Position numbers and translations under genes: made by a program. The notes under the pieces were generated by a model, which saw only the letters and a list, made by a program, of their open reading frames with translations, ran no database searches and was not told the origin of the DNA. This document shows positions 22,781 through 45,433 of a stretch of 64,000 nt of DNA, piece after piece. This stretch comes from Macrostomum hystrix (lineage: Eukaryota; Animalia; Platyhelminthes): positions 1,116,001 through 1,180,000 of the forward strand of contig CATNEN010000009.1 in NCBI GenBank assembly GCA_950097015.1, written 5' to 3'. The first letter of the stretch is position 1; the number at the start of each line of letters is the position of its first letter.

Positions 22781-25700
22781 CGATTCCGTCCTTCTCTCGC
22801 AGGTAGTCCTTCACTCTCCGCATGACCAGGTGGACCCGATCTCGCTCATCAGGTGATGAGAATCGCTGCTGGCCGATCAGGTTCTCGACCTTCTGCCAGG
22901 TGGTTGTCACGCATCTCCGGCGCAGACTCGGCTGCAATGGAATTCAAATTACATTTCAAATTCAAATTGCGGCTGCACTAAGTCATGAGCAGACTCACAT
23001 TGTCATTCAGGAAGCTGATCACGGTGCCAGCCAGCCCGGTGTCCACAATCATCTCCCGGTTGCCGTGAATGGCCTCAACCAGCTTCGCCTCATCGCTGCA
23101 GTAATGCAGCATCATCAGCAGCTCCTGACTGTCCAGTCGGCCAGAACTGCTCCCATGGCCGAAGTCCCTGAGCAGCGCCTTCACTCCTTCCTCATCTCCG
23201 CTCAGCTTCCTGGACTCGAGTTGCAGCGACTTCATCAGCGCGTGAAAGTTGATGTAGACAGAGCTGCTGCTCCTGTGGGGCACCTTCCACGGGAAGGCCG
23301 CTCTCATGTGGTCAGGCAGGAAGTGGAGATCTGGCTTCCGGGCAAAGCTGAACATGAACTTCCACGCCGAGTCCGATGAATTCAGAGAATTCCAGACGAA
23401 ATCCACTCGGGCTTCAAGAAATCTACTTTCATATCCGAATTCAAAAAAGTCATCTTGCTCGACTTCAGGACAGCTGACCCCACAACTCGGGCTGAAGGAA
23501 AGACCATCACCGACACACGACTCAATGGGATTTTCCTCTCTGAGCCGCAGCAGAGCTCTCAGACTCTCTCTGGCAGTCCTGGCGCAGTCTGGAATCCGAC
23601 TGAGCAGCGAGTCGATCTGCTGCAGGTGACTCGCTTCATCACCCAGCATCTCCAGAGCTCTCCTCACCGCGTCATAGATCTGGTGATACTCAAACTGCTC
23701 ATTTGATTCTGGGATCCTGAGTTCATTGACGAGCGGCAGGATGAGGAACGGGTGGAACTCGATCACAGTCGGTGAGTTCTTCATCAGTGTCTGCTCAAAC
23801 TCTGCCATCAGCTGCGGCAGCTCATCCATCACGTGACGCACAACTTCAGCAATCTCGGCCCTTCCCTCGTGGTCCTTGCGCAGGTAAATGGCGGCGTGTC
23901 TCATGAAGAAGTGGCGCATGCACTGCTGCTCACTGCTGCTTGAGTCAGTGAGGGAATCGAGCAGCAGCTCCAGTGACTGTCTCAGCAGCTTCATCAGATT
24001 CTGCGGCTGCCACTCATCAGCTGGTGTCCTGTCCAGCATGTAGAAGAGCAAGTTCTTCGCGTGGTAGGTCTTCAGGCCCTTGACTCGCTTTGCGATCACT
24101 CGCTTGATGAGGTACTTGAGCAAGATGAAGAGCTGACCCTGGAGTGTTGTGAGACTGTGCATCAGCCCCCTCTCCATCAGAGTGGTGCTGACTCGCATGC
24201 AGCGGCCCTCCTGGCCTGGAGGAGCTGCGGAGACCACGTGGCACTGGGTGCCGTATATGTTCTTAAGGATATCCTGAGGAATGTAGCAGTATCCAAAGAC
24301 TTTGAAATCCGGATATCCACAGCACGGGAAGGCCTTGACTTGGTCAACTGAAGGCGTCAGAGTCATTCCTTTGGATGCAATGTTCGGCTTGATGGCTGCA
24401 AATTGTGTGAGTGAAAATTAATCTGTTGAATGGTAATAAATTAATAATTCTTAATGTCTTTGCAAATTTCTATTCTCTCACCTAACCCTAACCCGTTTCT
24501 GTTATTCGAAATTCGAGCTATTCGAAATTGATGGTGGACAGGCAGGTCCCATGGGAGTAGTTAGTGACACCAACCAGTGCCCAGAGACCACATTGGACAC
24601 ACTTGCAGAGGCCGCATCCTATGGTATGCAGTGACTGTGGACTGACGAGTTCTCTGCATCCACTGCCATCTCTCCCTCTCCACATCTCACTGCTTTGCTT
24701 CTCAGGAATTATGTTCTTCAGGAAATGGCAACTGCTGTGAAATTCCAAGGCTAGAAAACTAATGCTTTTCACGAATGTAGTTTTATGAATGAATCTATTT
24801 AAAATGTTATCATTTGCAATATTTTTACATATTATCTAGCTTCCCTGAAATTTAAAATTTTTCGCTCGCTCACAACAAAGGATGATAAAATAAACTGAAT
24901 GGGTGTCCAGCAGAGTAGCGATCTCAAGCTGCTCTCATGCCTTGTACAGTCCCTAAATGTACTCACAAACTAGCCACAATTCACTCACAGTCGGTCCGAT
25001 GTGCAACATGGCCGTCGCTGAGCTCAACTTCAACGCATGTCACTTTTTCCAAACTTCTGTGTTTCCAAGTGCCAGCCAGATGCAGCGTCACTCGAGTGTC
25101 CATCACAGTGACATCCATGTCGGAGTCCGCATCAGTCTGTCCGCAGATTCCACTGAGGCAGTTGCCCCAGCCGTCAGCGAAGCTGCCGATCAAATGGCAC
25201 TCACCGACGCTCCTCCGTCTGAGAATTTGCTCCAGGACAGCCGCGGTGCCGCTCTGAACGGCCGCGTTGATTCGAGTGAACCCCGACCTGCTGAGCGACT
25301 CGTGGAGCCGGCAGGAAAGTTCGCTGCGAAAATGGAGTATGAGCACACGTGAGCACAGCTGCTTGCAAGGAAATTATTTGACATAGTTTATATAATAATA
25401 ATAAAATGGGGTTCGCAGAAATTTGTAAATGAGTAGTATGCGAGAGGGGCTATCTGGGACAAACGTCTACGCAGTCGCCATATTCCATCCGCTACTCTCG
25501 CATCGTGAATGTCAAAGTCTGGCAGATTGTGCAGTCTCTCTAGTCGGCTGAGTCTTCTTTTCGTTTTCCCCCAGTCGTTGTATATCCTATTCAAATACTC
25601 GGTGTGTCTTGTTACGGTTTTGTTTTATTCTTTCAATCTTTGTTCGCACTTCTGCTCGCAATTCTGAAATATCTGACTCTGCTGCTGTGAGTCTCGAGCT

Positions 25701-28700
25701 CAATCTATCATGCCGAACTCTAGTTGTATTTTCTGCTACTCTTCCTTCCACCAAGTTTGCTCGATTATCAGTGGCGGTTCTCAGAGTGGCGATGTCTGAT
25801 CTCAGAATGGCGATGTCTGATCTCAGAGTGGCGATGTCTGATCTCAGAGTGGCGATGTCTGATCTCAGAGTGGCGATGTCTGATCTCAGAGTGGTGATGT
25901 CTGATCTCAGAGTGGCGATGTCTGATCTCAGAGTGGCGATGTCTGATCTCAGAGTGGTGATGTCTGATCTCAGAGTGGCGATGTCTGATCTCAGAGTGGC
26001 GATGTCTAATCTCAGAGTGGCGATGTCTAATCTCAGAGTGGTGATGTCTGATCTCAGAGTGGCGATGTCTGATCTCAGAGTGGTGATGTCTGATCTCAGA
26101 GTGGCGATGTCTGATCTCAGAGTGGCGATGTCTAATCTCAGAGTGGCGATGTCTAATCTCAGAGTGGTGATGTCTGATCTCAGAGTGGCGATGTCTGATC
26201 TCAGAGTGGTGATGTCTGATCTCAGAGTGGCGATGTCTGATCTCAGAGTGGCGATGTCTGATCTCAGAGTGGTTATCGCTGCAACAAGAGTATCAAGTGT
26301 ATCCCGATCACGAACAAACTGTAAATATAGTCTGTCACTCTCTTCCTTCTGCTTTGCTACGTTCAACCGCAGGTCTTCCATGTTTATTTGTTGTTGGTGT
26401 GTTCAGCGCTCTAAGGGCTTTCAAGCGATCTCTGATGGGTTTGATTTCTGGATTTTTTTCGTCAACATTTATATAGTTGTATAGATTTATAGCTATATAA
26501 ATGTTGCGCCTGTCAAGATATGAAACTTGAGCACTAGTGAGTGTGCTTCCGCGATCCAACGATTCACCTGCAAAATTAATTTACATTTTTACTAGCAAAT
26601 TTTAAATTGCAGTTCTTTTTTCCTGATTGATCGTCACAGGTAAGGTTGATTCCACTTTTCAAAAGCAAAGATTAACGAATTCCTCCTGTGAAATCTTTCT
26701 GTTGGAGTTTTTTGTTGGATTTATAAAATAGGCAGGCGCAATGACCTCATTGTAAAATCTGTTTAGCCTGCCCTGTGGAATGGTTGGAAACAGGAGGATC
26801 AGATTGCAGTTCCCGCGAATTGTTTTGTTCGGGAGCTCGAACCAGTTCTGGGCAATGTAAATTACATTACAATTGTTGTGCCGTCCTCTTGTAAAATAGT
26901 TTTCTATCTGCTTCTGTGGGCCTGTCATGCAATTATCAAAGACAATCAAATGCTTTCTCCCCTTTTCTAGCTCATCTGGTTGGGGTAGAAGTTTGGTCTT
27001 TGGATCAATCTGTGGGTCTCCATAGGTGAGCACTTTAATGTGCTGCCATTATCATTGTCTTGCATGCGTTTTGCACATTCGGCAGCTACAATTTCTGGGT
27101 TATTGTGAAGGCTTTTTGGTTATTAAAACATGCATTAATGTCCTCTTTGTCCAGTTTGTTTTGAAGTCCTGCAAGCAGCATTTTATACTCATCTTGATAC
27201 TCATCTTGATACTCATCTTGATACTCATCTTGACACTCATCTTGACACTCATCTTGACACTCATCTTGACACTCATCTTGACACTCATCTTGACACTCAT
27301 CTTGACACTCATCTTGACACTCATCTTGACACTCATCTTGACACTCATCTTGACACTCATCTTGACACTCATCTTGACACTCATCTTGATACTCATCTTG
27401 ACACTCATCTTGACACTCATCTTGACACTCATCTTGATACTCATCTTGACACTCATCTTGATACTCATCTTGACACTCATCTTGACACTCATCTTGATAC
27501 TCATCTTGATACTCATCTTGATACTCATCTTGACACTCATCTTGACACTCATCTTGACACTCATCTTGATACTCATCTTGATACTCATCTTGATACTCAT
27601 CTTGATACTCATCTTGACACTCATCTTGACACTCATCTTGATACTCATCTTGATACTCATCTTGATACTCATCTTGACACTCATCTTGACACTCATCTTG
27701 ACACTCATCTTGATACTCATCTTGACACTCATCTTGATACTCATCTTGATACTCATCTTGACACTCATCTTGACACTCATCTTGATACTCATCTTGACAC
27801 TCATCTTGACACTCATCTTGACACTCATCTTGACACTCATCTTGACACTGTGGGAGAGTAGATGTGCGGAGTGTCATAGTCTAGGAATCCAGGTCTCAGA
27901 AGCATATCAAATACTCTGAATGTCTTTCCACTGCCAGATGTTCCAACAACAATGCATCTGAAGTGACTCGGGAATGACTCATTATGAGAAAACTTTAGCT
28001 GATTACGCGTCCAGTGAGGATTGATGTCCATTTTTCACCCAGGAAAAAATTATAAACAATAATTTCGAATCTCGTCGAGAGGTGTGTCATTTTGGGACTG
28101 ATATGTCTTTTGGGGACTTATATATGTCATTTTGGGACTTGCCTTTGTCATTTTGGGACTAGTCTTGTACCCTCGGAAAGTACCCTCTTGTCAAATTTGA
28201 AACCACTTTCCTTTTTTATGCTATCTCTTATCTTCTCATAGATTGCAGATCCACACTGTCTGGATTTGGAGCAAGTGGTTGAATCCCTGGGAGTGTTTTC
28301 CATTCAGTTACAGTATCCTTTATCTTTTTAGCCGCAGTAACAACACTGCCAACTGATTCTGCTACGTTCTTAATATTGTCTTTGCTATCACTAATAACTT
28401 TAAAGATCCGAGCACCCTGTGCAATTATATCAGCAAGACCTGAGCTTTCTTTCCACGGATAGCGGCCTGCTGGGAAAAGTCCAGATCCACGCTTTGTTCG
28501 ATTAAGTTCCTATTTGTCATAATTTTTGTCAACTTCATACGAGGTGCGGTCAAGTTCAAGTGAGACAAACGCAATATCTATGGTAAATCCCACCCGATCA
28601 TCTTCGCAAGTGTTTCATATTTTAGCTAGACTAATACACAATCAGTGACAAAAAATCAGCTTTTTTCATCGACTTCTGCCTTAGCTACAACTTGATAAAG

Positions 28701-31700
28701 TGCATCAGCCACAAGAACCCAAAAAATGGCGGCCTAACAATGGTGACCCCTACTCCCTACTCCCCAGACCTGGCGCCAGCTGACTATTTCCTCTTCCCAA
28801 CGATCAAGGGGGAGCTGGGGGCGTATCAGCGGAGACACCGTCAAGGTGGAGTGGGAGCGAGCCTGCAGCCGCCTTTCGCCAGGTGCCTTCGCCTCAGCCT
28901 TTGACAGGCGGATCGAGCGGCTCAAGAAGTGTGTCGAGATGAAGGGCAACTACGTCGAGAAGGGCTCGAAGATAGCAGAGGACGAATATGGGGCCTTTTC
29001 TGACGTTGACATTTAGAAAATTGAAGAAGCGCAAGAACATCCATTATTTCTGGGCAATAGTACCACATTTTTTGGGTCTCTCGACCTGTACTTTTGTTCA
29101 ATGAGAAAGCGTACAGCTGTTGCTAGTTTTTTTAACTGAAGTTTTGCTAATTGTATGTTAAAATTAATGCTCTTTTAGAATAAATCATCTGCTTTCCCTC
29201 TAAAGTGTTTAATAACGAGGCTGCCGACACTGTCTCACTTGAACTTGACCGCACCTCGTACTTTCATTCTGCCCAGCAGCTGAATATGTTTTATTGTAAC
29301 AATCAAAACCACAAGAACAGACAGCATGCGCTTGATCGTGAGAAGGACCACAGCATCCGCGTCTCCTTTTATCTAAATTGTAGTTAAAGCAATTCCAACT
29401 GATCTGCAGACCTACAGGACGATTTCCACTCAGCCAACCAGCACAATCTCATGAGGATGCTGCCAGCTGCCCTGCACCCTGTTGCGCCTTCCTCAAGTGA
29501 AGCCCGTTTAAGTTTGAGTTTCCTGGCACGCTGTCGAATTTATCCGCTTCCAAATGAGTGCCAGCTACGAATGCCACATAGAGCCTGGTGAACACATCGA
29601 GTATAGTGGTCTACAAAAACAATCACATCACTTTTAAGACCGCTTAAAAAAGTAAATACTGTTGAAGACCTACAGAAGTCCGGCTAATTCACACGTAGAG
29701 ACTGAATGGCTCAGACGGAATCCGAAAGACTTTCAAAGATCGAAGCTAGATGCTGACGAGAACAGAATTAAGTCAGAATCATTTAGCTGTGTGTCAGCAA
29801 CAAGAATAAACTGCATTCCAATATGCAGCATGTCAAGATTATCGGACCTGTTGCCAAATGAACACAATAGTATAGAAAGTAAATTAGCAAACATTTGCTA
29901 AATACTGTTTACTTGAGTTCTGTTGCCTGGTATATCCAAGATATTTGAGAGGCATATGACATGAGAAAATTTTTTTTATTAAAAAAACACATGGAAAAGT
30001 TACGTATGCACACACTTACACTGGAATGCATTCTGTCCGAGACCGAGACTTTTTACTGTACTCCGTGGAAATTCGTATGATCAGCATGGCTGACCATAGA
30101 CTATTTCATCCTTGGCGTGTGGTATTGCATCACTCCATGAAAATCTGAAGCGAATTCTATGCAGTTCTTGCGCATCGGTTTTTTATTCCTTAGACGAATG
30201 GGTGGGTAGCTGTAACGCAAAGCGTCTATGTCCTAAACCTTCCAGCCCTATATATGTACAGTAAGCTGTTGTCCTTCACTGCAGTCTTTCTCTGCCCCCT
30301 CCAAGCTCACTGTGCCTGTGTGAAAAACTGTCTACTTGAGTGGCATGGACCAACTTATTACCAGCGACGAATCGTTTAGCGACTCCAGCAGTTCAGCATC
30401 GAGCCAAGAGTTAGCCATCGAGAGTAACAGTGAGGAGGACAACGATGAAGCTGATGAGAATGGACCTGCTTGGAGTATCGTAAACGATGAAGCTGACGAG
30501 CGATCTGGAATAACTGCCTGAGTTTCTCGGGACATCTGGCGTTACGAATGGCGTGGCATGCAGATCCCAGTGCGCTGAGCTATTTTGAAAAGTTCATTAC
30601 GGAGGACATGATTAATCAGCTAAAGGAGAACACCAATGGTCGGGCTTGGGAGGAACTGCGAAGCTTCGAAGAGCGCAGCGAACTGATAACCAGCCATTGC
30701 CGCCTGGTCTGGCGGATTGGAAATACTGCTCAGCAGCTGAAATAAAAAGACACTTTCCATTATTTTCTATATGGGAATTGTGCGAAAGCCTGAAATCCAG
30801 AGCTACTGGGCTACCAGCAGATTCCACGACAGCCAGTTGTTCCAAAGCGAAAGCTGCCTGTCACGGAACCGATTTCAGATTCTTTCATATCTGAGGTTTT
30901 ATGATTGCCACGATGCCGAAGCTACAGACCCACTGCACAAAATCCGGCCATTTCTTAATAGCTTTTGGCAAGCATGTCAGAGCAACTTTATGCCGGACAG
31001 GGATATTGCAGTTGATGAGGAACTAGTTCATCTAGGTATGGTATAAAGACCTACTGCCTGTGTGATTCGAAAACCGGCTACCTGTGGAATGTCCTAGTCC
31101 ACTCGACATCTGAAGAAAGCAACAAATTCGGCTCAGAGTTCAGTGGCCACAATCTGTCCATTAGCGAGCGCATCGTCGCTGAGCTTTCCAAAGACCTGTT
31201 CGATCTTGGTCATCGAATATTCGTTGACAGCTTTTTTGTTCTTATCGCTTAGCAATGTTCCTCCTTGAGCACAACGCTCTGCTGACTGGAACCATTCGCT
31301 GCAACAGAGGCATCCACCGGAGCTCCTCCAACTGCCAACACCGGCTCCATCACATTGCTACATGCGTAGCGGCGATGTCCTGGCTGTTAAAGTATCGGAC
31401 CGGAAGGCAAGCGGGGTTAAAACTCTGTACCTCATCGATACGTTCGGAACGTATCAGTGACAGTGATTGATTACTCAAAGTCAATGGGCGGTGTCGACAG
31501 AATGGACTCTGCACTTCAGCCATACCATCCGACCAGGAAGATGTACCGCTGGCACCAGAAGCTCGGCATTCATTTCCTGCTGCAGCGGGCGCACAATTCG
31601 TGGATCGTTTATCACCTGTCAGGCGGCACACGCAAGTTTTTGCAGTTTGTGGAGCAGCTGGTTGTTGTCCTCATCGACAGCACTGGGCCAGGCAAGAAGC

Positions 31701-34700
31701 GGTGCTTTCGCCCTGCGCATGCAGCTGCTGGACCTGCTGGCTCGCATCTTCCCTTCAAGCTGGCTGCGATGCCTGAAAACCAGCGTCCTGCTCGTCGCTG
31801 TAGAGTTTGCTATCAAAACGGCAGAAGCAAGCGCACTGTCTTCAGCTGCCAGGAGTGCCCCGGTCAGCCTGGCCTCTGTGTCCCCGAATGCTTTCTTCAA
31901 TGGCACAGCTGAGCTTCGATCTGGGTGACTCGACCATGGAGATGAACTGCTGATTGAATTCCCTCAGTTTAAAAAAAACATCTAGGGATCTGTTTTAATA
32001 ATGGGAGGGTAAACAATAAAGTGTTAAAGGCAACAATATTTCACAGTTTGAAGTATATAAATGCCAACTATACTTGCTCGTGCATCTTTAATCTTTATGT
32101 ATTGTGTTAAATCCCATTTTACTAAATCTCTGATCTTGTATATTCATACAAGAGTTTATACTAAAAAATGATTTATGACAGCTTCGATAGAAAATTTTGA
32201 AGCGGGCCATTTATGTCACTTCCATCGAACTGTAAGTTTAATTACTGTACTGTTCCTGTTAAATTATATTTTTATTTCCTTGCAACTTTTCAGCCCATGT
32301 TTTGTGATGAATTCGTAGCTTGTTTCTTAAGCAGACTCGCGTCAACCTAGCAAATATTCTTGTCTACTCGCAGATCGGATAATTCTTTCTGAATGATTTC
32401 AAGGTCTCTAGTCTGTTCCACATCGTTCCATTCACAGTTTTCTTTTTTTGCAAGTAAATGAACCCAATCCGTATTTTACTGCCACTCTTCGTACGACTTT
32501 TTCGCTGGAGGATTTACGCCCATAGTCACTGTTCCGCATTACTTTGATTTTGTTACATCTACCGATGCAAGATATGATAGGTATCGCAAACAGAACAAAC
32601 CAGGAATGACGTTTTAGCTTTTGAAAACTATGGTCAGCCTGGCTGAGCATGCGGATTTTCACTGGGTGCTGCTTGTGCACGGGGCAGATGAGCCGCAAGT
32701 GCCATAGACTGTCGGAGCCCAGAAAATGTATATGGTCAGCCTGGCTGACCATCGGATTTGAATGGGTTAAGGAAAGATGTTTGCCCTAGAAGTATTTTAA
32801 AATATTACGATGCATAACCAAGTCCAGGTACAAAATGGTAAGTTGCGGGTGGCAATCGTAAACCAAAAAGCAAGCATCAGGCGCTACTCACGTGATGTCG
32901 ACACGAGCATCAATCGACATTGGATCGACGGCATGACCGCTCAGAACTGCTGCAAAGTCAGCATTTCCGAAGCAACAGAGAAGCCAAATGTGTCTTGGCA
33001 GCTGGTCGGATGCGGAACAGGGCAACACCGATGGCTGATTGCTAAACAGCGAATACGAGACGGACGATCCTCGCAAAACAGCCAAATCGGTGGCCGTCAG
33101 AGCGTCCAAATCAGGTAAAATTAGAGCAGATGACTCAAAAAGCTGAACTGCGATGTGCGGAAGCTCCAGCCAGATGGCCAGATGCAGAGGGGTCCAGCCA
33201 GAACTGCTTTTACGATTGACGTCAGCACCAGCAACAATGAGCAACCGGATAAGCTCAGAGTGATCCCATTCAACGGCAAAATGAATAGCCAGGCAGCCAT
33301 GGGTGTTCGGTAGATTGATGCTTGCTCCACATTCGATCAGCTTTCTGGCAATTTCCAAATGCCCTTGAGCAGTTGCTGTGTGAAGTGCTGAACAGCCATC
33401 TTTATTCTGTAGATCGATGCTTGCTCCACAGTCGATCAGCTTTCTGGCAATTTCCAAATGCCCTTGAGCAGTTGCTGTGTGAAGTGCTGAACAGCCATCT
33501 TTATTCTGTAGATCGATGCTTGCTCCACAGTCGATCAGCTTTCCGACCACTCCCAAGTGTCCCTGGAAAGCTGCGCTGTACAGTGGTGACCAGCCATCTT
33601 TATTCTGCAGATCGATGCTTGCTCCACAGTCGATCAGCTTTCCGACCACTTCCAAGTGTCCATTGACTGCTGCGCTGTTCAGTGGTGACCAGCCATCATT
33701 ATCCTGTAGATCGATGCTTGCTCCACAGTCGATCAGCTTTCCGACCACTTCCAAGTGTCCATTGACTGCTGCGCTGTTCAGTGGTGACGAGCCATCATTA
33801 TTCTGTTGATCGATGCTTGCTCCACAGTCGATCAGCTTTCCGACCACTTCCAAGTGTCCTTTTGTCGCTGCGCTGTTCAGTGGTGACGAGCCATCATTAT
33901 TCTGTAGATCGATGCTTGCTCCACAGTCGATCAGCTTTCCGACCACTTCCAAGTGGCCCTCATCAGCTGCGCTGTTCAGTGGTGACCAGCCATATTTATC
34001 CTGTAGATCGATGCTTGCTCCACAGTCGATCAGCTTTCCGACCACTTCCAAGTGTCCCTCATCAGCTGCGCTGTTCAGTGGTGACGAGCCAACATTATTC
34101 TGTAGATCGATGCTTGCTCCACAGTCGATCAGCTTTCCGACCACTTCCAAGTGTCCTTTTGTCGCTGCGCTGTTCAGTGGTGACGAGCCATCATTATTCT
34201 GTTGATCGATGCTTGCTCCACAGTCGATCAGCTTTCCGACCACTTCCAAGTGTCCCTTGACAGCTGCGATGTTCAATGGGGACCAGCCATTATTGTTCTG
34301 TCGATTGATGCTTGCTCCACAGTCGATCAGCTTTCCGACCACTCCCAAGTGTCCCTGGAAAGCTGCGCTGTTCAGTGGTGACCAGCCATCTTTATCCTGT
34401 AGATCGATGCTTGCTCCACAGTCGATCAGCTTTCCGACCACTTCCAAGTGTCCCTGGAAAGCTGCGCTCTTCAGTGGTGACCAGCCATCATTATTCTGTA
34501 GATCGATGCCTGCTCCACAGTCGATCAGCTTTCCGACCACTTCCAAGTGTCCCTGGAAAGCTGCGCTCTTCAGTGGTGACCAGCCATCTTTATTCTGTTG
34601 ATCGATGCTTGCTCCACAGTCGATCAGCTTTCCGACCACTTCCAAGTGGCCCTCATCAGCTGCGCTGTTCAGTGGTGACCAGCCATATTTATTCTGTAGA

Positions 34701-35614
34701 TCGATGCTTGCTCCACAGTCGATCAGCTTTCCGACCTCTCCCAAGTGTCCTTTTTTTGCTGCGCTGTTCAGTGGTGACGAGCCAAATATATTCTGTAGAT
34801 CGATGCTTGCTCCACAGTCGATCAGCTTTCCGACCACTTCCAAGTGTCCCTGGAAAGCTGCGCTCTTCAGTGGTGACCAGCCATCTTTATTCTGTTGATC
34901 GATGCTTGCTCCACAGTCGATCAGCTTTCCGACCACTTCCAAGTGTCCTTTTGTCGCTGCGCTGTTCAGTGGTGACGAGCCATCATTATTCTGTTGATCG
35001 ATGCTTGCTCCACAGTCGATCAGCTTTCCGACCACTTCCAAGTGTCCCTTGACTGCTGCGCTGTTCAGTGGTGACGAGCCATCTTTATCCTGTAGATCGA
35101 TGCTTGCTCCACAGTCGATCAGCTTTCCGACCACTTCCAAGTGTCCATGGACAGCTGCGCTGTTCAGTGGTGACCAGCCATCTTTATCCTGTAGATCGAT
35201 GCTTGCTCCACAGTCGATCAGCTTTCCGACCACTCCCAAGTGTCCTTTTTTTGCTGCGCTGTTCAGTGGTGACGAGCCAAATATATTCTGTCGATCGATG
35301 CTTGCTCCACAGTCGATCAGCTTTCCGACCACTCCCAAGTGTCCTTTTTTTGCTGCGATGTTCAGTGGGGACCAGCCATATTTATTCTGTCGATTGATGC
35401 TTGCCCCACAGTCGATCAGCTTTCCGACTACTCTCAAGTGGCCATGCTCAGCTGCGATGTTCAATAGTGTCCAGCCATCTTTGTTCTGCCGATCGATGCT
35501 TTGATAGAAATAGCAGGAAATAGTTAAGATGATGATAAAGATGAAGATTGAGAGGACGATAATTACAATTAAAAAGTAATTATTCAAATTCTCGTGTTGA
35601 GCGGCATTTGTCAT
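22764..35614 (-). CDS. Ankyrin-repeat cGAS-like receptor (Mab-21/cGLR nucleotidyltransferase), 4 exons, ~1540 aa
   Basis: Exons 35614-32892 (hydrophobic N-terminus plus 24 ANK), 25323-24989 (GSFADG...DSDMD), 24395-22999 (VDQVKAFPC, RVSTTLMERGL, LKTYHAKNLLFY, MRHFFM) and 22931-22764. All three donors are GTGAGT, acceptors end in GCAG, phases 2/1/0 match, total 4623 nt open. The cGLR call is strong; the ANK-to-NTase splice is inferred. Confidence 0.75.
25587..26381 (-). CDS. Coiled-coil protein with 21-bp heptad repeat (LRSDIAT)n, within the Polinton-like segment
   Basis: 264-aa ORF with about 23 heptads and unique N- and C-terminal flanks. Confidence 0.5.
   Translation of the reverse strand: MEDLRLNVAKQKEESDRLYLQFVRDRDTLDTLVAAITTLRSDIATLRSDIATLRSDITTLRSDIATLRSDITTLRLDIATLRLDIATLRSDIATLRSDITTLRSDIATLRSDITTLRLDIATLRLDIATLRSDIATLRSDITTLRSDIATLRSDIATLRSDITTLRSDIATLRSDIATLRSDIATLRSDIAILRSDIATLRTATDNRANLVEGRVAENTTRVRHDRLSSRLTAAESDISELRAEVRTKIERIKQNRNKTHRVFE
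26600..28031 (-). pseudogene. A32/FtsK-HerA-type DNA packaging ATPase, frameshifted and repeat-expanded
   Basis: Walker A CIVVGTSGSGKT (ORF 27837..28031); Walker B LIVFDN, RGRHNN, IYIAQ and TIRGNCN (ORF 26659..27033). Halves are in different frames, separated by a 12-bp array. Confidence 0.8.
27185..27850. repeat. 12-bp tandem repeat (CAAGATGAGTGT / CAAGATGAGTAT on minus strand) inside the ATPase
   Basis: About 55 copies encoding QDEC/QDEY, continuous with QDEYKMLLAGL. Confidence 0.95.
28228..28509 (-). pseudogene. Small amphipathic-helix ORF with KRGSG motif, 5' end disrupted
   Basis: Hand translation (not on ORF track): ELNRTKRGSGLFPAGRYPWKESSGLADIIAQGARIFKVISDSKDNIKNVAESVGSVVTAAKKIKDTVTEWKTLPG...; upstream in-frame TAG and mariner insertion. 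Confidence 0.45.
28540..29258 (+). mobile_element. Internally deleted mariner transposon (719 bp)
   Basis: Perfect 28-bp TIR CGAGGTGCGGTCAAGTTCAAGTGAGACA; TA TSD; YSPDLAPADYFLF motif; C-terminal RLKKCVEMKGNYVEK. Confidence 0.95.
30060..32770 (+). mobile_element. piggyBac DNA transposon with frameshifted transposase (about 30336-31912)
   Basis: DDD residues AVDEE, FVDSFF, GGVDRMD; C-terminal Cys-rich domain CRVC...CQEC...C..EC. Right end ...AATGGG|TTAA (32767-70). Subterminal TATGGTCAGCCTGGCTGA repeats have an inverted match at about 30065-30100; left TIR not found. Confidence 0.85.
33125..35500 (-). repeat. 24 x 99-bp ankyrin coding repeats
   Basis: 33-aa period; repeats 1-20 share GHL(E/G/R)(V/E)VGKLIDCGA, 21-22 are near-identical to each other, 23-24 are divergent caps. 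Confidence 0.97.
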
Positions 35615-36196
35615 TTAGCCGTTTTGGTTCTCTTCTGTTTAGTTAGGCAGAAAAGTGAAATTCGTTGCCATCTTAGAAGAATTTTTGGCGTAATAGAAAA
35701 CTTTATTCAAAGATAACCTCGGCTTCTGTGCATACTGGCGTCTTTTAGTTTGGTGGTTGCTGTCAATGGCAACCTTGACGGAGAGAGCGGTAGGTTTCGT
35801 GGGACAATAGAACTGAGTACAGTGAAGGCAGAATTAAGAAATTCATCTCTCCTCTAACTGGCTGTGTAACGAATGCAAAGCCACAACCATTTTGAGACTC
35901 GAGCTTTGCTGCAGCGCTATCAAATTGGACTCAACTGAGCAGTCCTATCTTGGCCTGCACCTGGGTTTGTGCCGAAAGCGTTGTCCTAGGCACTACACTA
36001 GTTTTATCTCACCACTGTCTGAATATAGATAAATGCCAGCATGATGAATGTAAGATTTGTTTTCAATCCAGAGTTTATCCCAAAAACATACTTTTTTACA
36101 GCAAATTTATCGAGCCTTTGATTGAGTTTAGCAACATTTGCTAAAACTTTGATTTTATTTCATATATGACTAGTATCTGGGTGGCAGAACGCAGGA

Positions 36197-36660
36197 TCAA
36201 GGCCTTAGCACCTTCACAGGCGGAACAGGTCGAACAGGCAGTTGATTTCGGCGGCACTCATTGGCCAGAGCGATCAGCTTGACCTGACCCTTGAAAAAAT
36301 CGTTGTAGGAGCTGTCGGTAGCGTCTAACCTGATGCATCTTCGAGGTGCAGCGCCCAGAAAATCGCGACTAGAATAGTTGAAGCTGGTGCTGTTGATGAA
36401 GCTACGGTTGTAGTACATTGAGGCTGCCTCCGTCAGGTTGGACACTGCGACCCCCAAGTCCACCAAAGCAGCCCGCGGTAAGGTCGAGTCTCCACCTTGC
36501 GCAGCGGCTGCAGGCTGCCGTAGGAATCGTAGAACAGAGTGCCGGGTCCCTTCCACTCCCACATGTTGGCGCCCATGGCCCCGTTCAGGCAGTTTTAGTT
36601 GTCCAGGTACGGCTGCGACTGCGAAGAGCAGCCAAGTCAGGCATTGGGTCCGAGAGAAGT
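36197..36660 (-). pseudogene. Coding-like segment of unknown family, probably disabled
   Basis: GC-rich, protein-like in two frames (NCLNGAMGANMWEWKGPGTLFYDSYG..., then NLTEAASMYYNRSFINSTSFNYSS...) with a stop and a frame change. Confidence 0.3.
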
Positions 36661-37162
36661 CGCCAGCTTCAGTCACCGCAAGCTGTGAGTTCACGCCGTT
36701 GCGACGTGACGTAACTTCAGTTGTCTTTGCCCAGAACATACCCGTCTTGTTTGTTGCAGTGCCAAGGGAATTTACAGACATATATGCATACTACACTACT
36801 TCAAAGCTTTCAGGAGGAGCAACCTCTCCGAAATATGCTTGCTCTAGAGGATTCTTCACGTAGTTCAATGCTGTTCTCTAAATTTACCATCTGTAGAGCT
36901 GAGCATAGGTACTCACAGTGCATTGCTCAATGCATAGTTTGGTCGCATGGGTGCGATAGGAAAATTAATAACCATGCAGTCGCACCCATTGTGTCCGCAG
37001 CCATTGCCTGTTAAAGTGACAATGACCAAAGCATACTTTTTCTGAGGAGAGGGTGAGAGAGCGAGAGAGCACAGGCGACAATATAAGCCCCAGGTGGGCA
37101 CCGATTTTTGGTTGCTGTGCTGAAAGGTGCAGTGCGAGGCGAGTCCACCCCACAGATCAGCG

Positions 37163-39526
37163 ATGGGTTGCATTCCCAGCAGCTTCTCGATCGCTCCTGC
37201 GACAGGTTCGTTGCTGTTCAGTGTGTTTTGTTTAAAGCACCGAAGCCTCCACAATGTTTGGTTTTCTCATAAAACCTTTGTTCGCAACATCTCTCTCTAC
37301 TTTGGTCACTTCAGGTCATTCAAGAAAGAAGATCAAGATCAAAGGAGGTATGGGTTCGGCGCTTTGACCCGGTTTTAAGTCTGCTTTCTTTTATTAATCT
37401 GCGAGGTCTTAAATGCAGACGCGTTGCACTAAATGTACTTTAAAAGTACTTGCCACGGCATCGCAAAGAAAGTCTTTGCACTAAAATTACTCGCTATGGA
37501 GTCATAATGACAGGCACACCATGCAGGCAAGGCTCCAAAGCACACCCAGTCAATAGGCTCCAAAGCACACCCAGTCAAGGCTCCAAAGCACACCCAGTCA
37601 AGGCTCCAATGCACACCCAGTCAAGGCTCCAAAGCACACCCAGTCAATAGGCTCCAAAGCACACCCAGTCAATAGGCTCCAAAGCACACCCAGTCAAGGC
37701 TCCAAAGCACACCCAGTCAAGGCTCCAAAGCACACCCAGTCAAGGCTCCAAAGCACACCCAGTCAAGGCTCCAAAACACACCCAGTCAAGGCTCCAAAGC
37801 ACACCCAGTCAAGGCTCCAAAGCACACCCAGTCAAGGCTCCAAAGCACACCCAGTCAAGGCTCCAAAGCACCCCCAGTCAATAGGCTCCAAAGCACACCC
37901 AGTCAATAGGCTCCAATGCACACCCAGTCAAGGCTCCAAAGTGCACCCAGTCAAGGCTCCAAAGCACACCCAGTCAAGGCTCCAAAGCACACCCAGTCAA
38001 TAGGCTCCAATGCACACCCAGTCAAGGCTCCAAAGCACACCCAGTCAATAGGCTCCAAAGCACACCCAGTCAATAGGCTCCAAAGCACACCCAGTCAAGG
38101 CTCCAAAGCACACCCAGTCAATAGGCTCCAAAGCACACCCAGTCAATAGGCTCCAAAGCACCCCCAGTCAATAGGCTCCAAAGCACACCCAGTCAATAGG
38201 CTCCAAAGCACCCCCAGTCAATAGGCTCCAAAGCACACCCAGTCAATAGGCTCCAAAGCACCCCCAGTCAAGGCTCCAAAGCACACCCAGTCAATAGGCT
38301 CCAAAGCACACCCAGTCAAGGCTCCAATGCACACCCAGTCAAGGCTCCAAAGTGCACCCAGTCAAGGCTCCAAAGCACACCCAGTCAAGGCTCCAAAGCA
38401 CACCCAGTCAATAGGCTCCAAAGCACACCCAGTCAATAGGCTCCAAAGCACACCCAGTCAATAGGCTCCAAAGCACACCCAGTCAATAGGCTCCAAAGCA
38501 CACCCAGTCAATAGGCTCCAAAGCACACCCAGTCAAGGCTCCAAAGTACACCCAGTCAAGGCTCCAAAGCACACCCAGTCAATAGGCTCCAAAGCACACC
38601 CAGTCAAGGCTCCAAAGCACACCCAGTCAGTAGGCTCCAAAGCACACCCAGTCAATAGGCTCCAAAGCACACCCAGTCAAGGATTTAAAGCACACCCATT
38701 GCTGATGTTTTTGGATTTCATCAATCTAAGTCGGTAATTAGTGTTCAGCCTTACTATTGCAATCATTTTAGGTCACAAAAAACACAAGAAACTGCGCCAC
38801 ATCCGCGTGGTCAGGATCGGCAGCGTTGGCAGCGGTAAGCAATCAGCCATGCGTTTATCGTGCATCTTCTATATTTAAACAGACGGTACAATATCATCTT
38901 ATTGTTTCCCGATCCTGCAGGTGAAGGCGGTGACGCACCGGTGAGTTTCACTTTTAGGATTTTAGCGAATTTCTGGTCATTTAACAACTAACATTTGCCT
39001 TGCATATATACTCGTACCTCTATGGCGAATCCATATTGGTTCAATAAAAAGTTCAACAAATAATCAGTACAGTATGATTAACAATGGCCAACATGGTTAA
39101 TTGCATGATGCATGTTATCTGAAATACCCCGTGGTTACTGCTAGCAATTCATGGATCAAAATCATGCGAATGCCGCGCCTTTATTTTAGGATGCCGGTGG
39201 CTCAGACGATGGTGGAGACCGGGTAAGTATGAGACTCTGAGCCGATTGATGCTTCCTATAGCTAGCATCGATGGCGCACCATGGGTTCATTTATGACACT
39301 TTCTCCCAGCACGAAATTGGCATAAGTCATCAATTACATGCAGAGCGATGGTGGAGGCGACAACGACGACTATGGCGGAGGCGACGACTATGGCGGAGGA
39401 GGCGACGACTATGGCGGAGGTGGCAACGACTATGGCGGAGGTGGCAACGATTTTGGTGGCGGCGGCACCGACTATGGTGGAGGCGGAGGCGGCTGGGACG
39501 GTGGAGGCGGAGGCGGCTGGGATTAG
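37163..39526 (+). CDS. Micro-exon gene, 124-aa protein: MGC lipidation motif, basic patch, acidic Gly/Tyr-rich tail
   Basis: Exons 37163-37205, 37315-37347, 38772-38834, 38921-38940, 39190-39222, 39344-39526 with GT-AG ends and phases 1,1,1,0,0; 375 nt open frame. Confidence 0.65.
37520..38700. repeat. 23/25-bp intronic minisatellite (AGGCTCCAAAGCACACCCAGTCA +/- AT)
   Basis: About 49 copies in intron 2 of the micro-exon gene. Confidence 0.95.
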
Positions 39527-41875: not shown

Positions 41876-43251
41876 TATTTTTACTAGGTGCTATTTTGCT
41901 GCATGCCAAAACTACCACTAGCACTATGCCACTATGCTGTGTTGCAATCAGAGACGTTGATCTGATATCAGAGATGTGCAGCTGAAAGCACACTCTTATT
42001 TGGTATCTTATCTTATCAGAGATAACATTTAAAACATTTTAATAAGTGGAAAATAAAATTATGCAAGTTTCAAAATTATAGGCAGTGTGTGGCTATGTCT
42101 ATGGCAAAATACTTGTGCTTGTAGGTTTCAAATGACATGGCAGTGCATGCAGTGTGCATGGCTATGTCTATTGTGAAGAGGTACAAAAATAGAAAAAATA
42201 ATTAAGGTAGGCAGGCCTAGGGTTAGATGATTCTGGGTGACACTACTTTGCCATCTGAGCATACCACTATTATAAATGAGTGGCTTGTTTGTTCCCTGTT
42301 CCCTGTCTCCCTTTAATAATTTATTATTTTTTAAAATATTGAGAAAGTTTTTTATCTTTCCTAAAAATTAAATGTGAAACTAGGGAAACTAAAATTATAG
42401 CTAAAAAAGTATAGCGCAACATAATTTATCCTTGGTGCCAAACCTAAAATTCAGGTTTAGGTTTGGCAATGTGGCAATATATCCTAATGTTGCTAGACTA
42501 TACTGTAACACTGCTTGCCTTGAATATACTGCAATGCAACATGGGAAATTCAGAAAATGTGATGGGCAGTCAGACGTTACTTGTCCAGCTATTCCAATAA
42601 AGGTTTGCTACTCATTGTTTAACAATATCTTTTTAGATATAGTTCCTATAAATTTTGTATTAAAGAAAAGCTAACACTATTAATGTTTGCTACAATAGCC
42701 AAGACAAACACAATCACCTAAGTCTTTAAAACATCTATATATATAAAAGTGAAAACTCTGTCTGTCTGTCTGTCTGTCTGTGTGCAACCTTTTGTCTTTA
42801 TAGACGCCGAAACCACTCAACCAAATCGCACCAAACTTTGCACATACCTAAAACCACCTACGCTGAGTGCAATAGGCTACTCAAATTCCCGAAAAATCAT
42901 TTCCTTCCTGCTCAAAAGTGCAAAAAACTGCTCAAAATCGTCAAAAAAATCACTCAATTCGACATATCGTCGCCCCACTTTGTCAGATTTTCTCCAAATT
43001 TGATCCACTTACACTTTACATGTTTTCCAACAATGCTGTCAATTTTGAACATCTCTACTCAATCCAGAGCAAAGCTGCATCATCTCAAAGTGAGTCACTT
43101 TTTGTTTTCCGAGGACAGCCACCCCAACTCCCCTCCGCCACTCTGCGGGCCAAATTTTATTACAGCCACCCCCTCCCTTCCCCGGGCGCCGGAACCCCAG
43201 ACTGTACATTGTATTTCAAGCCGTGAATGTACACAGCCCAAACCCCTAGAC

Positions 43252-44149
43252 CAGGGGTCGGCAAACTCCGGCCCGCGGGCCAGATGCGGCCCTCGAAGCT
43301 CCCAAATCCGGCCCGTTGCCCCTTCTGACATCTACAGTGTCCTGTTTCATCTTTCTCGGTCTAATCCCTCCCGTGTCTCATCTCTCCAGTGTCTTATCTC
43401 TCCACTGTCTTATCTTACCCGTGTCTCATCTCTCCAGTGTCTCATCTCTCCAGTGTCTCATCTCTCCCGTGTCTCATCTCTCCAGTGTCTCATCTCTCCC
43501 GTGTCTCATCTCTCCCGTGTCCCATCTCTTCCGTGTCTCATCTCTCCCGTGTCTCATCTCTCCCGTGTCTCATCTCTCCACTGTCTTATCTTACCCGTGT
43601 CTCATCTCTCCAGTGTCTCATCTCTCCAGTGTCTCATCTCTCCCGTGTCTCATCTCTCCCGTGTCTCATCTCTTCCGTGTCTCATCTCTCCCGTGTCTCA
43701 TCTCTCCAGTGTCTCATCTCTCCACTGTCTTATCTTACCCGTGTCTCATCTCTCCAGTGTCTCATCTCTTCCGTGTCTCATCTCTCCCGTGTCTCATCTC
43801 TTCCGTGTCTCATCTCTTCTGTGTCTCATCTCTCCCGTGTCTCATCTCTTCTGTGTCTCATCTCTCCCGTGTCTAATCTCTTCCGTGTCTCATCTCTCCC
43901 GTGTCTCATCTCTCCCGTGTCTCATCTCTTCTGTGTCTCATCTCTCCCGTGTCTAATCTCTCCTGTGTCTCATCTCTCCCGTGTCTAATCTCTCCCCTGT
44001 CTCATCTCTCCCGTGTCTAATCTCTCGCGTGTCTAATCTCTCCCGTGTCTTATCTCTCCCCTATCTCATATTTATACAGTCAATGCGGCCCGCTGTCGTC
44101 TTTTAGGTTCTCTCTTTGGCCCGCCAGCAAATAAGTTTGCCTACCCCTG
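43252..44149. mobile_element. hAT (Charlie-like) MITE nested in Helitron unit 1 (second copy 46612-47509), with internal 16-bp satellite
   Basis: TIR CAGGGGTCGGCAAACT / AGTTTGCCTACCCCTG; 8-bp TSD CCCTAGAC / CCCTTGAC; empty site CCCTAGAC|TGTCTACTGG at about 44687. Confidence 0.9.
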
Positions 44150-44809
44150 CCCTTGACTGTCTACTGGCCCCCAAGCAGCACTGAGACTGAGTGCGTGCGT
44201 GTGAAAACTCTGTCTGTGTGTGTGTGTGCAACCTTTTGTCTTTATAGACGCCGAAACCGCTCAACCAAATCGCACCAAACTTTGCACATACCTAAAACCA
44301 CCTACGCTGAGTGCAATAGGCTACTCAAATTCCCGAAAAATCATTTCCTTCCTGCTCAAAAGTGCAAAAAACTGCTCAAAAATCGTCAAAAAATCACTCA
44401 ATTCGACATATCGTCGCCCCACTTTGTCAGATTTTCTCCAAATTTGATCCACTTACACTTTACATGTTTTCCAACAATGCTGTCAATTTTGAACATCTCT
44501 ACTCAATCCAGAGCAAAGCTGCATCATCTCAAAGTGAGTCACTTTTTGTTTTCCGAGGACAGCCACCCCAACTCCCCTCCGCCACTCTGCGGGCCAAATT
44601 TTATTACAGCCACCCCCTCCCTTCCCCGGGCGCCGAAGCCCCAGACTGTACATTGTATTTCAAGCCGTGAATGTACACAGCCCAAACCCCTAGACTGTCT
44701 ACTGGCCCCCAAGCAGCACTGAGACTGAGTGCGGTGAGTGCGGTGGCGTCCCAGTGCGCAGGGCTCTCCGGTCGATATTTCTCTCCAGCCAGCCTATTTC
44801 TCTCGATAT

Positions 44810-45433
44810 GCTGACGTTGACTGGCTGTCAGAGAGGGCAATTCTGTGTCCTAGAAATGATGCCACCAACGAAATTAACTACCAACTGCTTCAGGAGTTGC
44901 CAGGTGCAGTTTTCACCTACAAGTCAATTGATACAACGTTGACTGATGACACCGCTGTGGAGTATCCTGTTGAGTTTCTGAACTCTCTAGATCCTCCTGG
45001 AACTCCATCGCACAACTTGCAGCTGAAAGTTGGGGCACCAATTATGCTCCTCCGCAACCTGAATGCGCCAAGGCTGTGTAACGGCACCAGACTGATAGTC
45101 AGGCGGCTCTTCCCACACGTGATTGAGGCCACGATAATGACTGGATCTGGCAGAGGAGAGTCTGTGTTCGTTCCCCGGATTCCAATTATCCCCACGGACC
45201 TGCCATTTCAGTTCAAGCGACTGCAGTTCCCTGTGAGAGTGTGCTTTGCGATGACTATTAACAAGGCTCAGGGACAGTCGCTGAAGGTGGCTGGCATCAA
45301 CCTGGAGACTCCTTGCTTCTCGCATGGGCAGCTTTATGTCGCCTGCTCCCGTGTTGGAACTCCAGCTGGCCTATTCATTTTCGCACCAAGGGGAAGAACG
45401 AAGAATGTGGTGTATCCCCAGGCCTTGAGGTGA
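44810..45433 (+). pseudogene. Helitron PIF1-like helicase C-terminal fragment (copy 2 at about 48180-48790 is frameshifted)
   Basis: RAILCPRN, LKVGAPIMLLRNL, LCNGTRL, RLQFPVRVCFAMTINKAQGQSL, FSHGQLYVACSRV; Rep domain and N-terminal helicase motifs absent. Confidence 0.92.

What the first reader, a model, noticed from the sequence alone, without database searches (positions are those of the whole stretch)
33125..35500. Natural DARPin-like variable repeat array with shuffled cassettes
Seen: the framework GHLEVVGKLIDCGASI is almost invariant, even at DNA level. Variation concentrates in the hairpin (L/Q/R-Q-N/D-K/N/I-D/Y/F/V-G-W/S) and first helix (N/K/Y-S/I-AA-xx; xx = KK, VH, VK, TK, FQ, DE, VN). 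Cassettes recur (QQNNDGSS/ATK in repeats 6 and 14; QQNKDGWS/KSAAFQ in 7 and 10; NIFGSS/AKK in 3 and 8; KYGWS/ADE in 9 and 16) and recombine (11, 15, 18). Established: these are the ankyrin binding-surface positions randomised in DARPins. Inference: unequal crossover or gene conversion generates a variable recognition surface, loosely analogous to VLR or plant NLR LRR diversification.
Basis: partly seen in the sequence, partly recalled or inferred. Interest (0 to 1): 0.82.

Follow-up and report, generated by a model that had tools for sequence, protein, structure and literature searches.

The report
Hypervariable ankyrin array on a cGAS-like gene
An expressed flatworm gene joins about 24 near-identical ankyrin repeats, which differ almost only at the residues that normally touch a ligand, to a cGAS-like immune-type enzyme; the array has been completely reshuffled since a recent gene duplication, as in fungal immune receptors, but what it binds is unknown.

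Summary
A 908-aa minus-strand ORF (32888-35614) holds 22 units spaced exactly 33 aa apart. Units 2-20 have an almost invariant framework, synonymous sites included. Variation sits at the hairpin and at the end of helix 1, covering 5 of the 6 positions randomised in DARPins.

RNA-derived contigs show this exon is transcribed from its own ATG. It is spliced in frame, across a 7.6-kb GT..AG intron, to a cGAS-like (Mab21/cGLR) nucleotidyltransferase.

A recent inverted paralogue lies 220 kb away (flanking exon dS 0.01-0.03). It has 15 repeats instead of 24, and their order and content are not colinear with this array. Framework DNA is as similar between the two arrays as within each.

At the a-priori DARPin positions, nonsynonymous change exceeds the synonymous rate about 2-4 fold in all 13 arrays tested. 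For this array alone the most conservative count is borderline (1.9, p=0.05).

At least 38 ANK-cGLR genes of this build exist in the genome. No dispersed donor cassettes were found, and nothing shows somatic change, so the VLR analogy is weak. Fungal NLR "highly internally conserved" repeats are the closest known system.

ANK-cGLR fusions in Macrostomum were already catalogued (Li et al. 2023). The scan has flagged the same pattern twice before on other DNA of this genome.

The parts
35615..35701 (-). 5' untranslated leader, as far as RNA-derived contigs reach
   Evidence: Contigs of runs X2, X3 and X4 run unspliced from 35328 to 35701, 35664 and 35686 with zero differences. An in-frame TAA directly precedes the ATG.
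35504..35614 (-). Start codon (35612-35614) and an N-terminal, very hydrophobic 25-residue segment (residues 13-37), a possible membrane anchor
   Evidence: ORF start. Kyte-Doolittle 19-residue mean is 3.54. The segment is covered by the RNA contigs. It is the only confident part (helix 4-39, pLDDT about 78) of an otherwise failed single-sequence model. It is absent from the paralogue.
33530..35410 (-). Units 2-20 of the ankyrin array: a near-invariant framework with hypervariable hairpin and helix-1 positions
35411..35503 (-). Unit 1, a more divergent first repeat (21-27 nt differences from the others)
33332..33529 (-). Units 21-22: a second repeat type (different helix 1 and 2), duplicated, 1 nt apart
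32892..33331 (-). Two diverged capping-type repeats (23-24) and a linker tail, up to the last exonic base 32892. 98.7% identical to the paralogue.
   Evidence: exon end from the contig break at 32892
32886..32891 (-). Splice donor GTGAGT; the ORF's apparent stop codon lies inside it
25324..32891 (-). Intron 1 (7,568 nt, GT..AG), filled with a piggyBac-type transposase relic and minisatellites
   Evidence: Pfam zf-Tnp_2 / DDE_Tnp_1_7 on 31457-31912; TRF
24981..25323 (-). Exon 2: nucleotidyltransferase core start, with GS and D-x-D motifs. The 5' end is exact; the 3' end was not determined.
   Evidence: The loose end of the spliced contigs reads in frame into this exon. ORF and motifs. Macrostomum lignano orthologues begin exactly here.
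22978..24366 (-). Exon 3 ORF: Mab-21 C-terminal (HhH/H2TH-like) domain plus a helical C-terminal extension. The exon's 5' end was not determined.
   Evidence: Pfam Mab-21_C 35.4 bits against a cut-off of 24.1. 68-70% identical to M. lignano 'Mab-21 domain-containing protein'. The orthologue's model matches cGAS and Cv-cGLR1.

Best explanation
The array is the N-terminal domain, encoded in exon 1, of an expressed ankyrin-cGLR fusion protein. About 24 ankyrin repeats are followed by a cGAS-like nucleotidyltransferase.

Shown:
- The repeats share a framework that is kept almost identical at the DNA level.
- Differences are concentrated at the hairpin tip and the end of helix 1, the concave face that ankyrin domains use to bind partners.
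- The array has changed repeat number, order and content completely since a recent gene duplication.
- The same build recurs in at least 38 genes of this genome.

Inferred:
- Germline unequal crossing-over and gene conversion, within and between the two sister arrays, keep homogenising the framework and shuffling units. New substitutions at the binding face are retained by diversifying selection.
- The array works as a variable ligand-recognition or regulatory module. It would couple binding of a protein or other non-nucleic-acid ligand to activation of the cGLR enzyme, much as the repeat domains of NLRs do.

The ligand, the enzyme's product and any variation between individuals are unknown.
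For: Array anatomy and site pattern.

Expression and in-frame splicing to the NTase exon:
- An 856-nt contig in each of three runs covers 32892-33347 and then leaves the genome.
- Its continuation encodes the first residues of exon 2.
- The boundaries are GTGAGT and AG.
- Two runs join the A-type exon and one joins the B-type exon, so both paralogues are expressed.

cGLR identity:
- Pfam Mab-21_C is above its cut-off.
- The nearest named relatives are M. lignano Mab-21 proteins, some with ANK.
- The model of the 70%-identical orthologue hits cGAS and oyster Cv-cGLR1 first, with probability 1.00 and TM 0.5 by target.

Turnover:
- Between paralogues, exon dS is 0.009-0.03 and intron substitution divergence is 3.7-6.5%.
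- Yet there are 24 versus 15 repeats, and the best-match order is not colinear.
- Framework nucleotide divergence is 2.2% within A, 2.6% within B and 2.5% between them. Variable codons differ by 23-27%.

Selection:
- Framework omega is 0.06.
- Omega at the six a-priori DARPin positions, relative to the pooled synonymous rate, is 2.59 (p=7e-4) here and 2.1-4.3 in 12 other arrays.
- The tree-free lower bounds are 1.6-4.2.

Family: 38 of 40 ANK loci hit in the genome sit just upstream, on the same strand, of NTase and Mab21_C exons. Their entropy peaks fall at the same positions.
Against: - For this array alone the tree-free count is borderline (omega 1.91, p=0.052). The dN/dS computed within the variable codons is only 1.2.
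- The tree-based counts can be inflated by recombination.
- The PHI test is not significant here (p=0.10).
- There are no data on variation between individuals. The apparent variants in RNA contigs are exactly the six A/B paralogue differences.
- No ligand, no enzymatic activity and no link to infection are shown.
- STING was found only as one sub-threshold match.
- Repeats within an array may be older than the paralogue split. High divergence at variable codons therefore does not by itself date the changes.
Confidence: 0.6

Rival explanations
1. Neutral young array. The repeats were amplified recently by unequal crossing-over. The framework is held by folding constraints, and the surface positions are simply unconstrained and drift. 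Nothing selects for diversity, and the array is a scaffold or spacer.
For: dN/dS within the variable codons is about 1.2, which is compatible with neutrality. The conservative count for this array is borderline (p=0.052). PHI is not significant here.
Against: Nonsynonymous change at the a-priori surface positions exceeds the pooled synonymous rate in all 13 arrays tested. In the conservative count 10 of 13 reach p<0.05. Drift does not predict that the same few positions are the most variable in arrays with different frameworks. It also does not predict that framework synonymous sites (2.2-2.6%) are less diverged than paralogue introns (3.7-6.5%).
Confidence: 0.22
2. Host-directed regulatory domain. 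The array binds conserved host partners for localisation, autoinhibition or oligomerisation of the enzyme. Differences between repeats tune an extended interface rather than track foreign ligands.
For: Long ankyrin solenoids such as ankyrin-1/2 bind many host partners along their inner groove; these are the best natural matches. An N-terminal hydrophobic segment suggests membrane tethering.
Against: A conserved host interface should be conserved between recent paralogues. Instead, number, order and surface residues are all reshuffled while the enzyme exons are 97-99% identical.
Confidence: 0.13
3. Somatic, VLR-like assembly. Units are copied into the expressed gene from a cassette library in somatic cells.
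For: Only the formal resemblance of modular repeats with variable faces.
Against: A DNA search of the whole genome finds this repeat type only in the two arrays themselves. The germline genes are already complete open reading frames, and RNA contigs match the germline sequence at 99% or better.
Confidence: 0.02
4. Assembly artefact or decaying pseudogene.
For: Long near-identical tandem repeats are prone to mis-assembly.
Against: The frame is intact over 908 aa. The gene is expressed and correctly spliced in frame. k-mer-level agreement with independent runs is high. A second intact copy exists.
Confidence: 0.03

Closest known systems
Highly internally conserved (HIC) ANK/TPR/WD repeat domains of fungal NOD-like receptors (HET-E/D, NWD family and Podospora ANK and TPR NLRs; Dyrka et al. 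2014, PMC4986451)
   Same: Repeats within one gene are about 85% identical. Repeat number differs between copies. Units are reshuffled within and between loci. Variable or positively selected sites lie on the concave face (inner helix and hairpin) of the ANK solenoid. The repeats are attached to an innate-immune signalling module (one search compared).
   Different: The signalling module here is a cGAS-like nucleotidyltransferase, not a NACHT/NB-ARC NTPase. The repeats are N-terminal rather than C-terminal. The host is an animal; Dyrka et al. found only 0.8% of metazoan repeat proteins to be HIC. Polymorphism between individuals is shown in fungi but not here.
Animal cGAS-like receptors with appended ankyrin repeats (Li et al. 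2023, 10.1101/2023.02.22.529553; Stylophora pistillata and Macrostomum lignano entries in their Table S2)
   Same: The domain architecture is the same: ANK plus a Mab21/cGLR core. The nearest named relatives of this gene are M. lignano proteins of that catalogue's kind.
   Different: The catalogue records the fusion as a domain architecture only. Near-identity of the repeats, hypervariable surface positions, array turnover and the size of the family (at least 38 genes, with arrays up to a 2,726-aa ORF) are not described there or in any paper found. That paper states that most platyhelminths lack immune-type cGLRs.
DARPins (designed ankyrin repeat proteins)
   Same: A consensus-like framework repeated head to tail. 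Diversity falls at positions 2, 3, 5, 13 and 14 of the 33-residue module (the list of randomised positions is from my own knowledge of Binz et al. 2003 and agrees with the differences between repeats of the DARPin chain aligned).
   Different: This array is natural and much longer (24 versus 2-3 internal repeats). Position 33 is fixed, and positions 1, 9, 10, 18 and 32 also vary. Diversity arises by evolution, not synthesis.
Lamprey variable lymphocyte receptors and plant NLR LRR domains
   Same: Solenoid repeats with variable ligand-facing residues in immune receptors. Plant NLR LRRs also diversify in the germline by unequal recombination.
   Different: Those are LRR, not ANK. VLRs are assembled somatically from flanking cassette libraries, for which there is no sign here.

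Membership tests
Ankyrin repeat domain (Pfam PF00023 / PF12796) | 33-residue helix-turn-helix-hairpin modules matching the Pfam profiles above the curated cut-off | tested here: met
   Ank E 5e-150 (22 stretches) and Ank_2 E 1e-216. DARPins and ankyrin-1/2 are the best PDB sequence matches.
cGAS-like receptor (cGLR / Mab21 family) | Mab-21 domain recognised by profile | tested here: met
   Mab-21_C scores 35.4 bits against a cut-off of 24.1 on exon 3. The short NTase exon alone is not recognised by Pfam.
cGAS-like receptor (cGLR / Mab21 family) | cGAS-type bilobal nucleotidyltransferase fold | tested here: met
   Tested on the 70%-identical M. lignano orthologue P0121, because the window's exons were not joined. 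The model has pLDDT 76 and pTM 0.77. Its best Foldseek hits are mouse and human cGAS and Cv-cGLR1, with probability 1.00.
cGAS-like receptor (cGLR / Mab21 family) | Catalytic G-S and [DE]-h-[DE] motifs plus a third acidic residue | tested here: inconclusive
   GS, a D-M-D motif about 20 residues later, and an S-V-D motif at the start of exon 3 are present by eye. No residue-level structural superposition was made.
cGAS-like receptor (cGLR / Mab21 family) | Ligand-activated synthesis of a cyclic or linear oligonucleotide that signals through STING or another receptor | not testable with these tools
   Needs biochemistry. The only STING_LBD match in the genome is below the cut-off (25.6 bits).
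Fungal-type HIC repeat receptor (Dyrka et al. 2014 criteria) | Repeats at least about 85% alike over at least 100 aa | tested here: met
   Mean identity to the consensus is 0.876 over units 2-20 (627 aa). Mean pairwise identity is 0.827.
Fungal-type HIC repeat receptor (Dyrka et al. 2014 criteria) | Repeat-number differences and reshuffling between copies or alleles | tested here: met
   Met between recent paralogues: 24 versus 15 units in a non-colinear order. Differences between individuals could not be tested; the contigs are too short.
Fungal-type HIC repeat receptor (Dyrka et al. 2014 criteria) | Excess nonsynonymous change at concave-face positions | tested here: met
   Omega at the a-priori positions is 2.59 (tree-based) and 1.91 (tree-free, p=0.052) here. 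It is above 1 in all 13 arrays. No likelihood site model was run.
Fungal-type HIC repeat receptor (Dyrka et al. 2014 criteria) | STAND NTPase (NACHT or NB-ARC) as the central domain, which defines an NLR | tested here: not met
   Pfam finds no NACHT or NB-ARC in the ANK exon or the downstream exons. The partner domain is a cGLR. It therefore works like an HIC repeat receptor but is not an NLR.
VLR-type somatically assembled receptor | Incomplete germline gene plus a library of donor cassettes | tested here: not met
   The germline ORF is complete. This repeat type occurs only in the two arrays.

The most novel reading that the evidence does not exclude
Macrostomum-type flatworms have turned cGAS-like enzymes into a large germline-encoded repertoire of sensors: at least 38 genes, with arrays of 12 to about 80 repeats. 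The ligand specificity of these sensors would lie in fast-reshuffling, hypervariable ankyrin solenoids rather than in nucleic-acid binding by the enzyme core. That would be an NLR-like or fungal-HIC mode of receptor diversification grafted onto cyclic-nucleotide signalling, with some members possibly membrane-anchored.
Probability: 0.35. Interest if true: 0.85.

Novelty: new variant of a known kind. Interest (0 to 1): 0.62.

Why it matters
cGLRs are known as sensors of nucleic acids, and most have unknown ligands. A family in which the enzyme carries a long ankyrin solenoid, reshuffled between recent duplicates and variable only on its binding face, suggests that some cGLRs read protein or other ligands through an appended, evolvable domain.

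It would also show that the concerted-evolution-plus-hypervariable-site strategy described for fungal NLRs arose independently in animals. It offers natural DARPin-like libraries with an enzymatic read-out. Whether repeat shuffling creates new recognition specificities then becomes testable in a laboratory flatworm lineage.

Tried and rejected
1. Word-based protein search with the tail of the ANK exon. It was swamped by generic ankyrin proteins, with no informative relatives.

2. Single-sequence AlphaFold model of the whole ANK exon. Mean pLDDT was 45, with spurious beta strands, so it could not be used to map sites. The mapping rests instead on the sequence alignment to DARPin chains.

3. PDB sequence search with exon 3. 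No match; the fold search on the orthologue was needed.

4. Pfam on the NTase exon alone. No significant family.

5. Allelic variation from RNA contigs. The six 'variants' in the tail are exactly the A/B paralogue differences, and the variant 93-nt contig is paralogue B. This gives no information on individuals.

6. Splice acceptor at about 35497 in front of the first repeat, which I first assumed from the T-rich stretch. Rejected, because contigs run through it unspliced to 35701.

7. Donor-cassette library. Rejected by the genome-wide DNA search.

8. Two DARPin papers did not print the list of randomised positions. That list is therefore from my own knowledge, checked against the DARPin chain.

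9. The spliced protein was not joined.

Full report
WHAT IS THERE

Tandem Repeats Finder reports a 99-nt unit, 22.2 copies, 91% matches at 33306-35501. On the minus strand this is part of one open frame, 32888-35614, 908 aa. In it the motif GHL recurs 22 times at exactly 33-residue spacing. Pfam Ank and Ank_2 match at E 5e-150 and 1e-216.

In units 2-20, 22 of the 33 codons are invariant or nearly so, third positions included. Variation is confined to unit positions 6, 7, 9, 10, 11, 13, 17, 18, 21, 22 and 26.

An alignment to DARPin chains of solved structures fixes the register. In DARPin numbering the variable sites are 1, 2, 3, 5, 9, 10, 13, 14, 18, 31 and 32. Five of the six fully randomised DARPin positions (2, 3, 5, 13, 14) are the most variable here. 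Position 33 is a fixed Q, and its neighbour 32 varies instead. The list of randomised positions is from my own knowledge of Binz et al. 2003. It agrees with the differences between repeats of the DARPin chain shown.

Units 6 and 14, and units 7 and 10, are identical at the DNA level. Units 9 and 16 differ by 1 nt, and units 3 and 8 by 2 nt.

THE GENE

The window comes from a 220-Mb genome. Its nearest named protein relatives are Macrostomum lignano proteins at 68-70% identity.

Contigs of three public runs were laid on 32000-37900. They match the array at 99% or better. On the 5' side they run unspliced from 35328 to 35664-35701. The ATG at 35614, which is preceded by an in-frame TAA, and the very hydrophobic residues 13-37 are therefore in the RNA.

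On the 3' side an 856-nt contig in each run covers 32892-33347 and then leaves the genome. Its continuation, read on the minus strand, is the sequence that follows the AG at 25324-25325. It continues the frame into an ORF with a G-S ... D-M-D nucleotidyltransferase signature. The donor is GTGAGT at 32886-32891, so the ORF's apparent stop codon lies in the intron. Intron 1 is 7,568 nt long. It holds a piggyBac-type transposase relic and minisatellites.

The next ORF, 22978-24366, carries Pfam Mab-21_C above its cut-off. M. lignano orthologues begin exactly at the exon-2 boundary and bridge exons 2 and 3. A model of the 70%-identical orthologue has pLDDT 76. Its best structural matches are mouse and human cGAS and the oyster receptor Cv-cGLR1, with probability 1.00.

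Each was searched by reference, and the joined step was left out.

The array is thus the N-terminal domain of an expressed ankyrin-cGLR fusion. This agrees with another first-reader note on this window.

THE PARALOGUE AND ARRAY TURNOVER

A gene-sized inverted duplicate lies 220 kb away on the same contig. Its enzyme exons are nearly identical to the window's. Exon 3 dS is 0.016, exon 2 dS is 0.03, and the capping repeats and linker have dS 0.009. Intron substitution divergence is 3.7-6.5%.

Its array nevertheless has 15 repeats instead of 24. It contains unit types absent from the window's array and lacks some of the window's types. The best matches of its units in the window's array fall in the order 12, 5, 11, 12, 5/18, 5/17, 3/8, 17/19, 17, 15, 17, 9, 4, which is not colinear.

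Framework nucleotides differ by 2.2% within array A, 2.6% within B and 2.5% between them. That is less than the introns. Variable codons differ by 23-27%. Identical units occur at non-adjacent places: A6=A14, A7=A10 and B2=B5.

This is what continuing unequal exchange or gene conversion, within and between the two arrays, would produce. A genome-wide DNA search finds this repeat type only in these two arrays. There is therefore no cassette library of the VLR kind.

Both paralogues are expressed. One run's spliced contig joins the B-type exon 2 and two join the A-type. A variant 93-nt contig is an exact B unit. The six 'variants' seen in the tail are exactly the A/B differences. The contigs therefore say nothing about variation between individuals.

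SELECTION

Nei-Gojobori estimates among units 2-20 give dN/dS of 0.89 overall, 0.06 for the 22 framework codons and 1.20 for the 11 variable codons.

I then used positions fixed in advance (the six DARPin positions) and counted changes by parsimony on a tree of the units. The nonsynonymous rate there is 2.59 times the pooled synonymous rate (p=7e-4) in this array and 4.33 times in the paralogue. It is 2.1-4.0 times in 11 further ANK-cGLR arrays. The other 27 codons give 0.26-1.0.

Recombination inflates such counts, so I also took a tree-free lower bound: a minimum spanning tree over the distinct codons at each site. This gives 1.91 (p=0.052) here, 3.06 (p=0.003) in the paralogue and 1.6-4.2 elsewhere. 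It is above 1 in all 13 arrays. A few of those loci overlap the same gene, so about 11 are independent.

A PHI-type permutation test for recombination between sites is not significant in this array (p=0.10), although 86 of 435 site pairs are incompatible. It is significant in the paralogue and in two other arrays (p of 0.001 or less) and not in a fourth.

The case for diversifying selection is therefore good for the family and only moderate for this array taken alone. No likelihood site model and no population sample were available.

THE FAMILY

A protein search of the genome with the array hit 40 distinct ANK loci. Of these, 38 lie directly upstream, on the same strand, of matches to the NTase exon and the Mab21_C exon. 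The NTase exon alone has 138 matches. Array ORFs reach 2,726 aa.

Many arrays have their own framework, of 33 or 34 residues. Mean identity between units is 0.64-0.81, and entropy peaks fall at the same module positions. Others are old and diverged, at 0.34-0.47.

Two earlier follow-ups of this scan reported the same pattern on other DNA of this genome. I reached it independently before reading them.

COMPARISON WITH WHAT IS KNOWN

Li et al. 2023 catalogued about 3,000 animal cGLRs. They noted that a minority carry ANK or TPR repeats. Their domain table lists several M. lignano proteins with Ank_2, some of which entered their biochemical screen. The fusion itself is therefore known. That paper also says most platyhelminths lack immune-type cGLRs.

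The near-identity of the repeats, the hypervariable face and the array turnover are not mentioned there. I found no paper in the held library that links cGLRs, ankyrin repeats and positive selection.

[quoted passage not shown] These show about 85% identity between repeats, repeat-number polymorphism, reshuffling within and between loci, and positively selected sites on the concave face (Dyrka et al. 2014). The present gene meets those repeat criteria. It has no NACHT or NB-ARC domain, so it works like such a receptor without being an NLR.

VERDICT

The finding is a new variant of a known kind, and one more member of a family the scan has already met.

The functional reading rests on inference. 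It holds that the array is a variable recognition or regulatory module that gates a cGLR.

Noticed in passing
window 35504-35578 (-): Residues 13-37 of the protein form a 25-residue, extremely hydrophobic segment (Kyte-Doolittle mean 3.54) with positive charges only on its C-terminal side. This suggests a membrane anchor that leaves the array and enzyme in the cytosol. The paralogue lacks it. Many other family members start with a milder hydrophobic helix (mean about 1.7).
   Followed up: partly
window 30646-31928 (+): Relic of a piggyBac-type transposase (Pfam zf-Tnp_2 E 1e-8, weak DDE_Tnp_1_7) inside intron 1. It is absent from the paralogue's intron.
   Followed up: partly
window 25587-26381 (-): A 21-nt minisatellite (25779-26272) keeps a 264-aa frame open inside intron 1, coding a heptad-like repeat. 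The paralogue has a shorter version.
   Followed up: no
window 37030-37349 (+): A separate plus-strand transcript upstream of the ANK gene. RNA contigs show a 109-nt GT..AG intron (37203-37311) and a further splice after 37349, probably across the 23-nt minisatellite at 37524-38698.
   Followed up: no
   Followed up: no
window 42838-45433 and 46198-48787 (+): Two consecutive stretches carry the same series of ORF lengths and the same 16-nt minisatellite (43343-44069 and 46703-47429). This is a direct duplication about 3.4 kb long.
   Followed up: no
whole window: Minisatellites are unusually dense: more than 25 arrays with periods of 12-103 nt. One example is 83 copies of a 28-mer at 20463-22778, just downstream of the cGLR gene and also present in the paralogue.
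   Followed up: no
G000:C2:9104529-9104996 (-): The only match to the STING ligand-binding domain in the genome is below the Pfam cut-off (25.6 bits), in a 337-aa ORF. It is a candidate receptor for this large cGLR family, or a sign that another receptor is used.
   Followed up: no
G000:C39:20413943-20421073 (-) and other loci: Other ANK-cGLR genes have very long arrays in single ORFs (2,726, 1,911, 1,810 and 1,630 aa). Several use a 34-residue unit with its own framework.
   Followed up: partly
window 24981-25346 (-) versus L031 9187-9552 (+): Between the two recent paralogues the NTase exon shows more nonsynonymous than synonymous change (dN 0.054, dS 0.030). The counts are small, but the enzyme core may also be evolving fast.
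   Followed up: no
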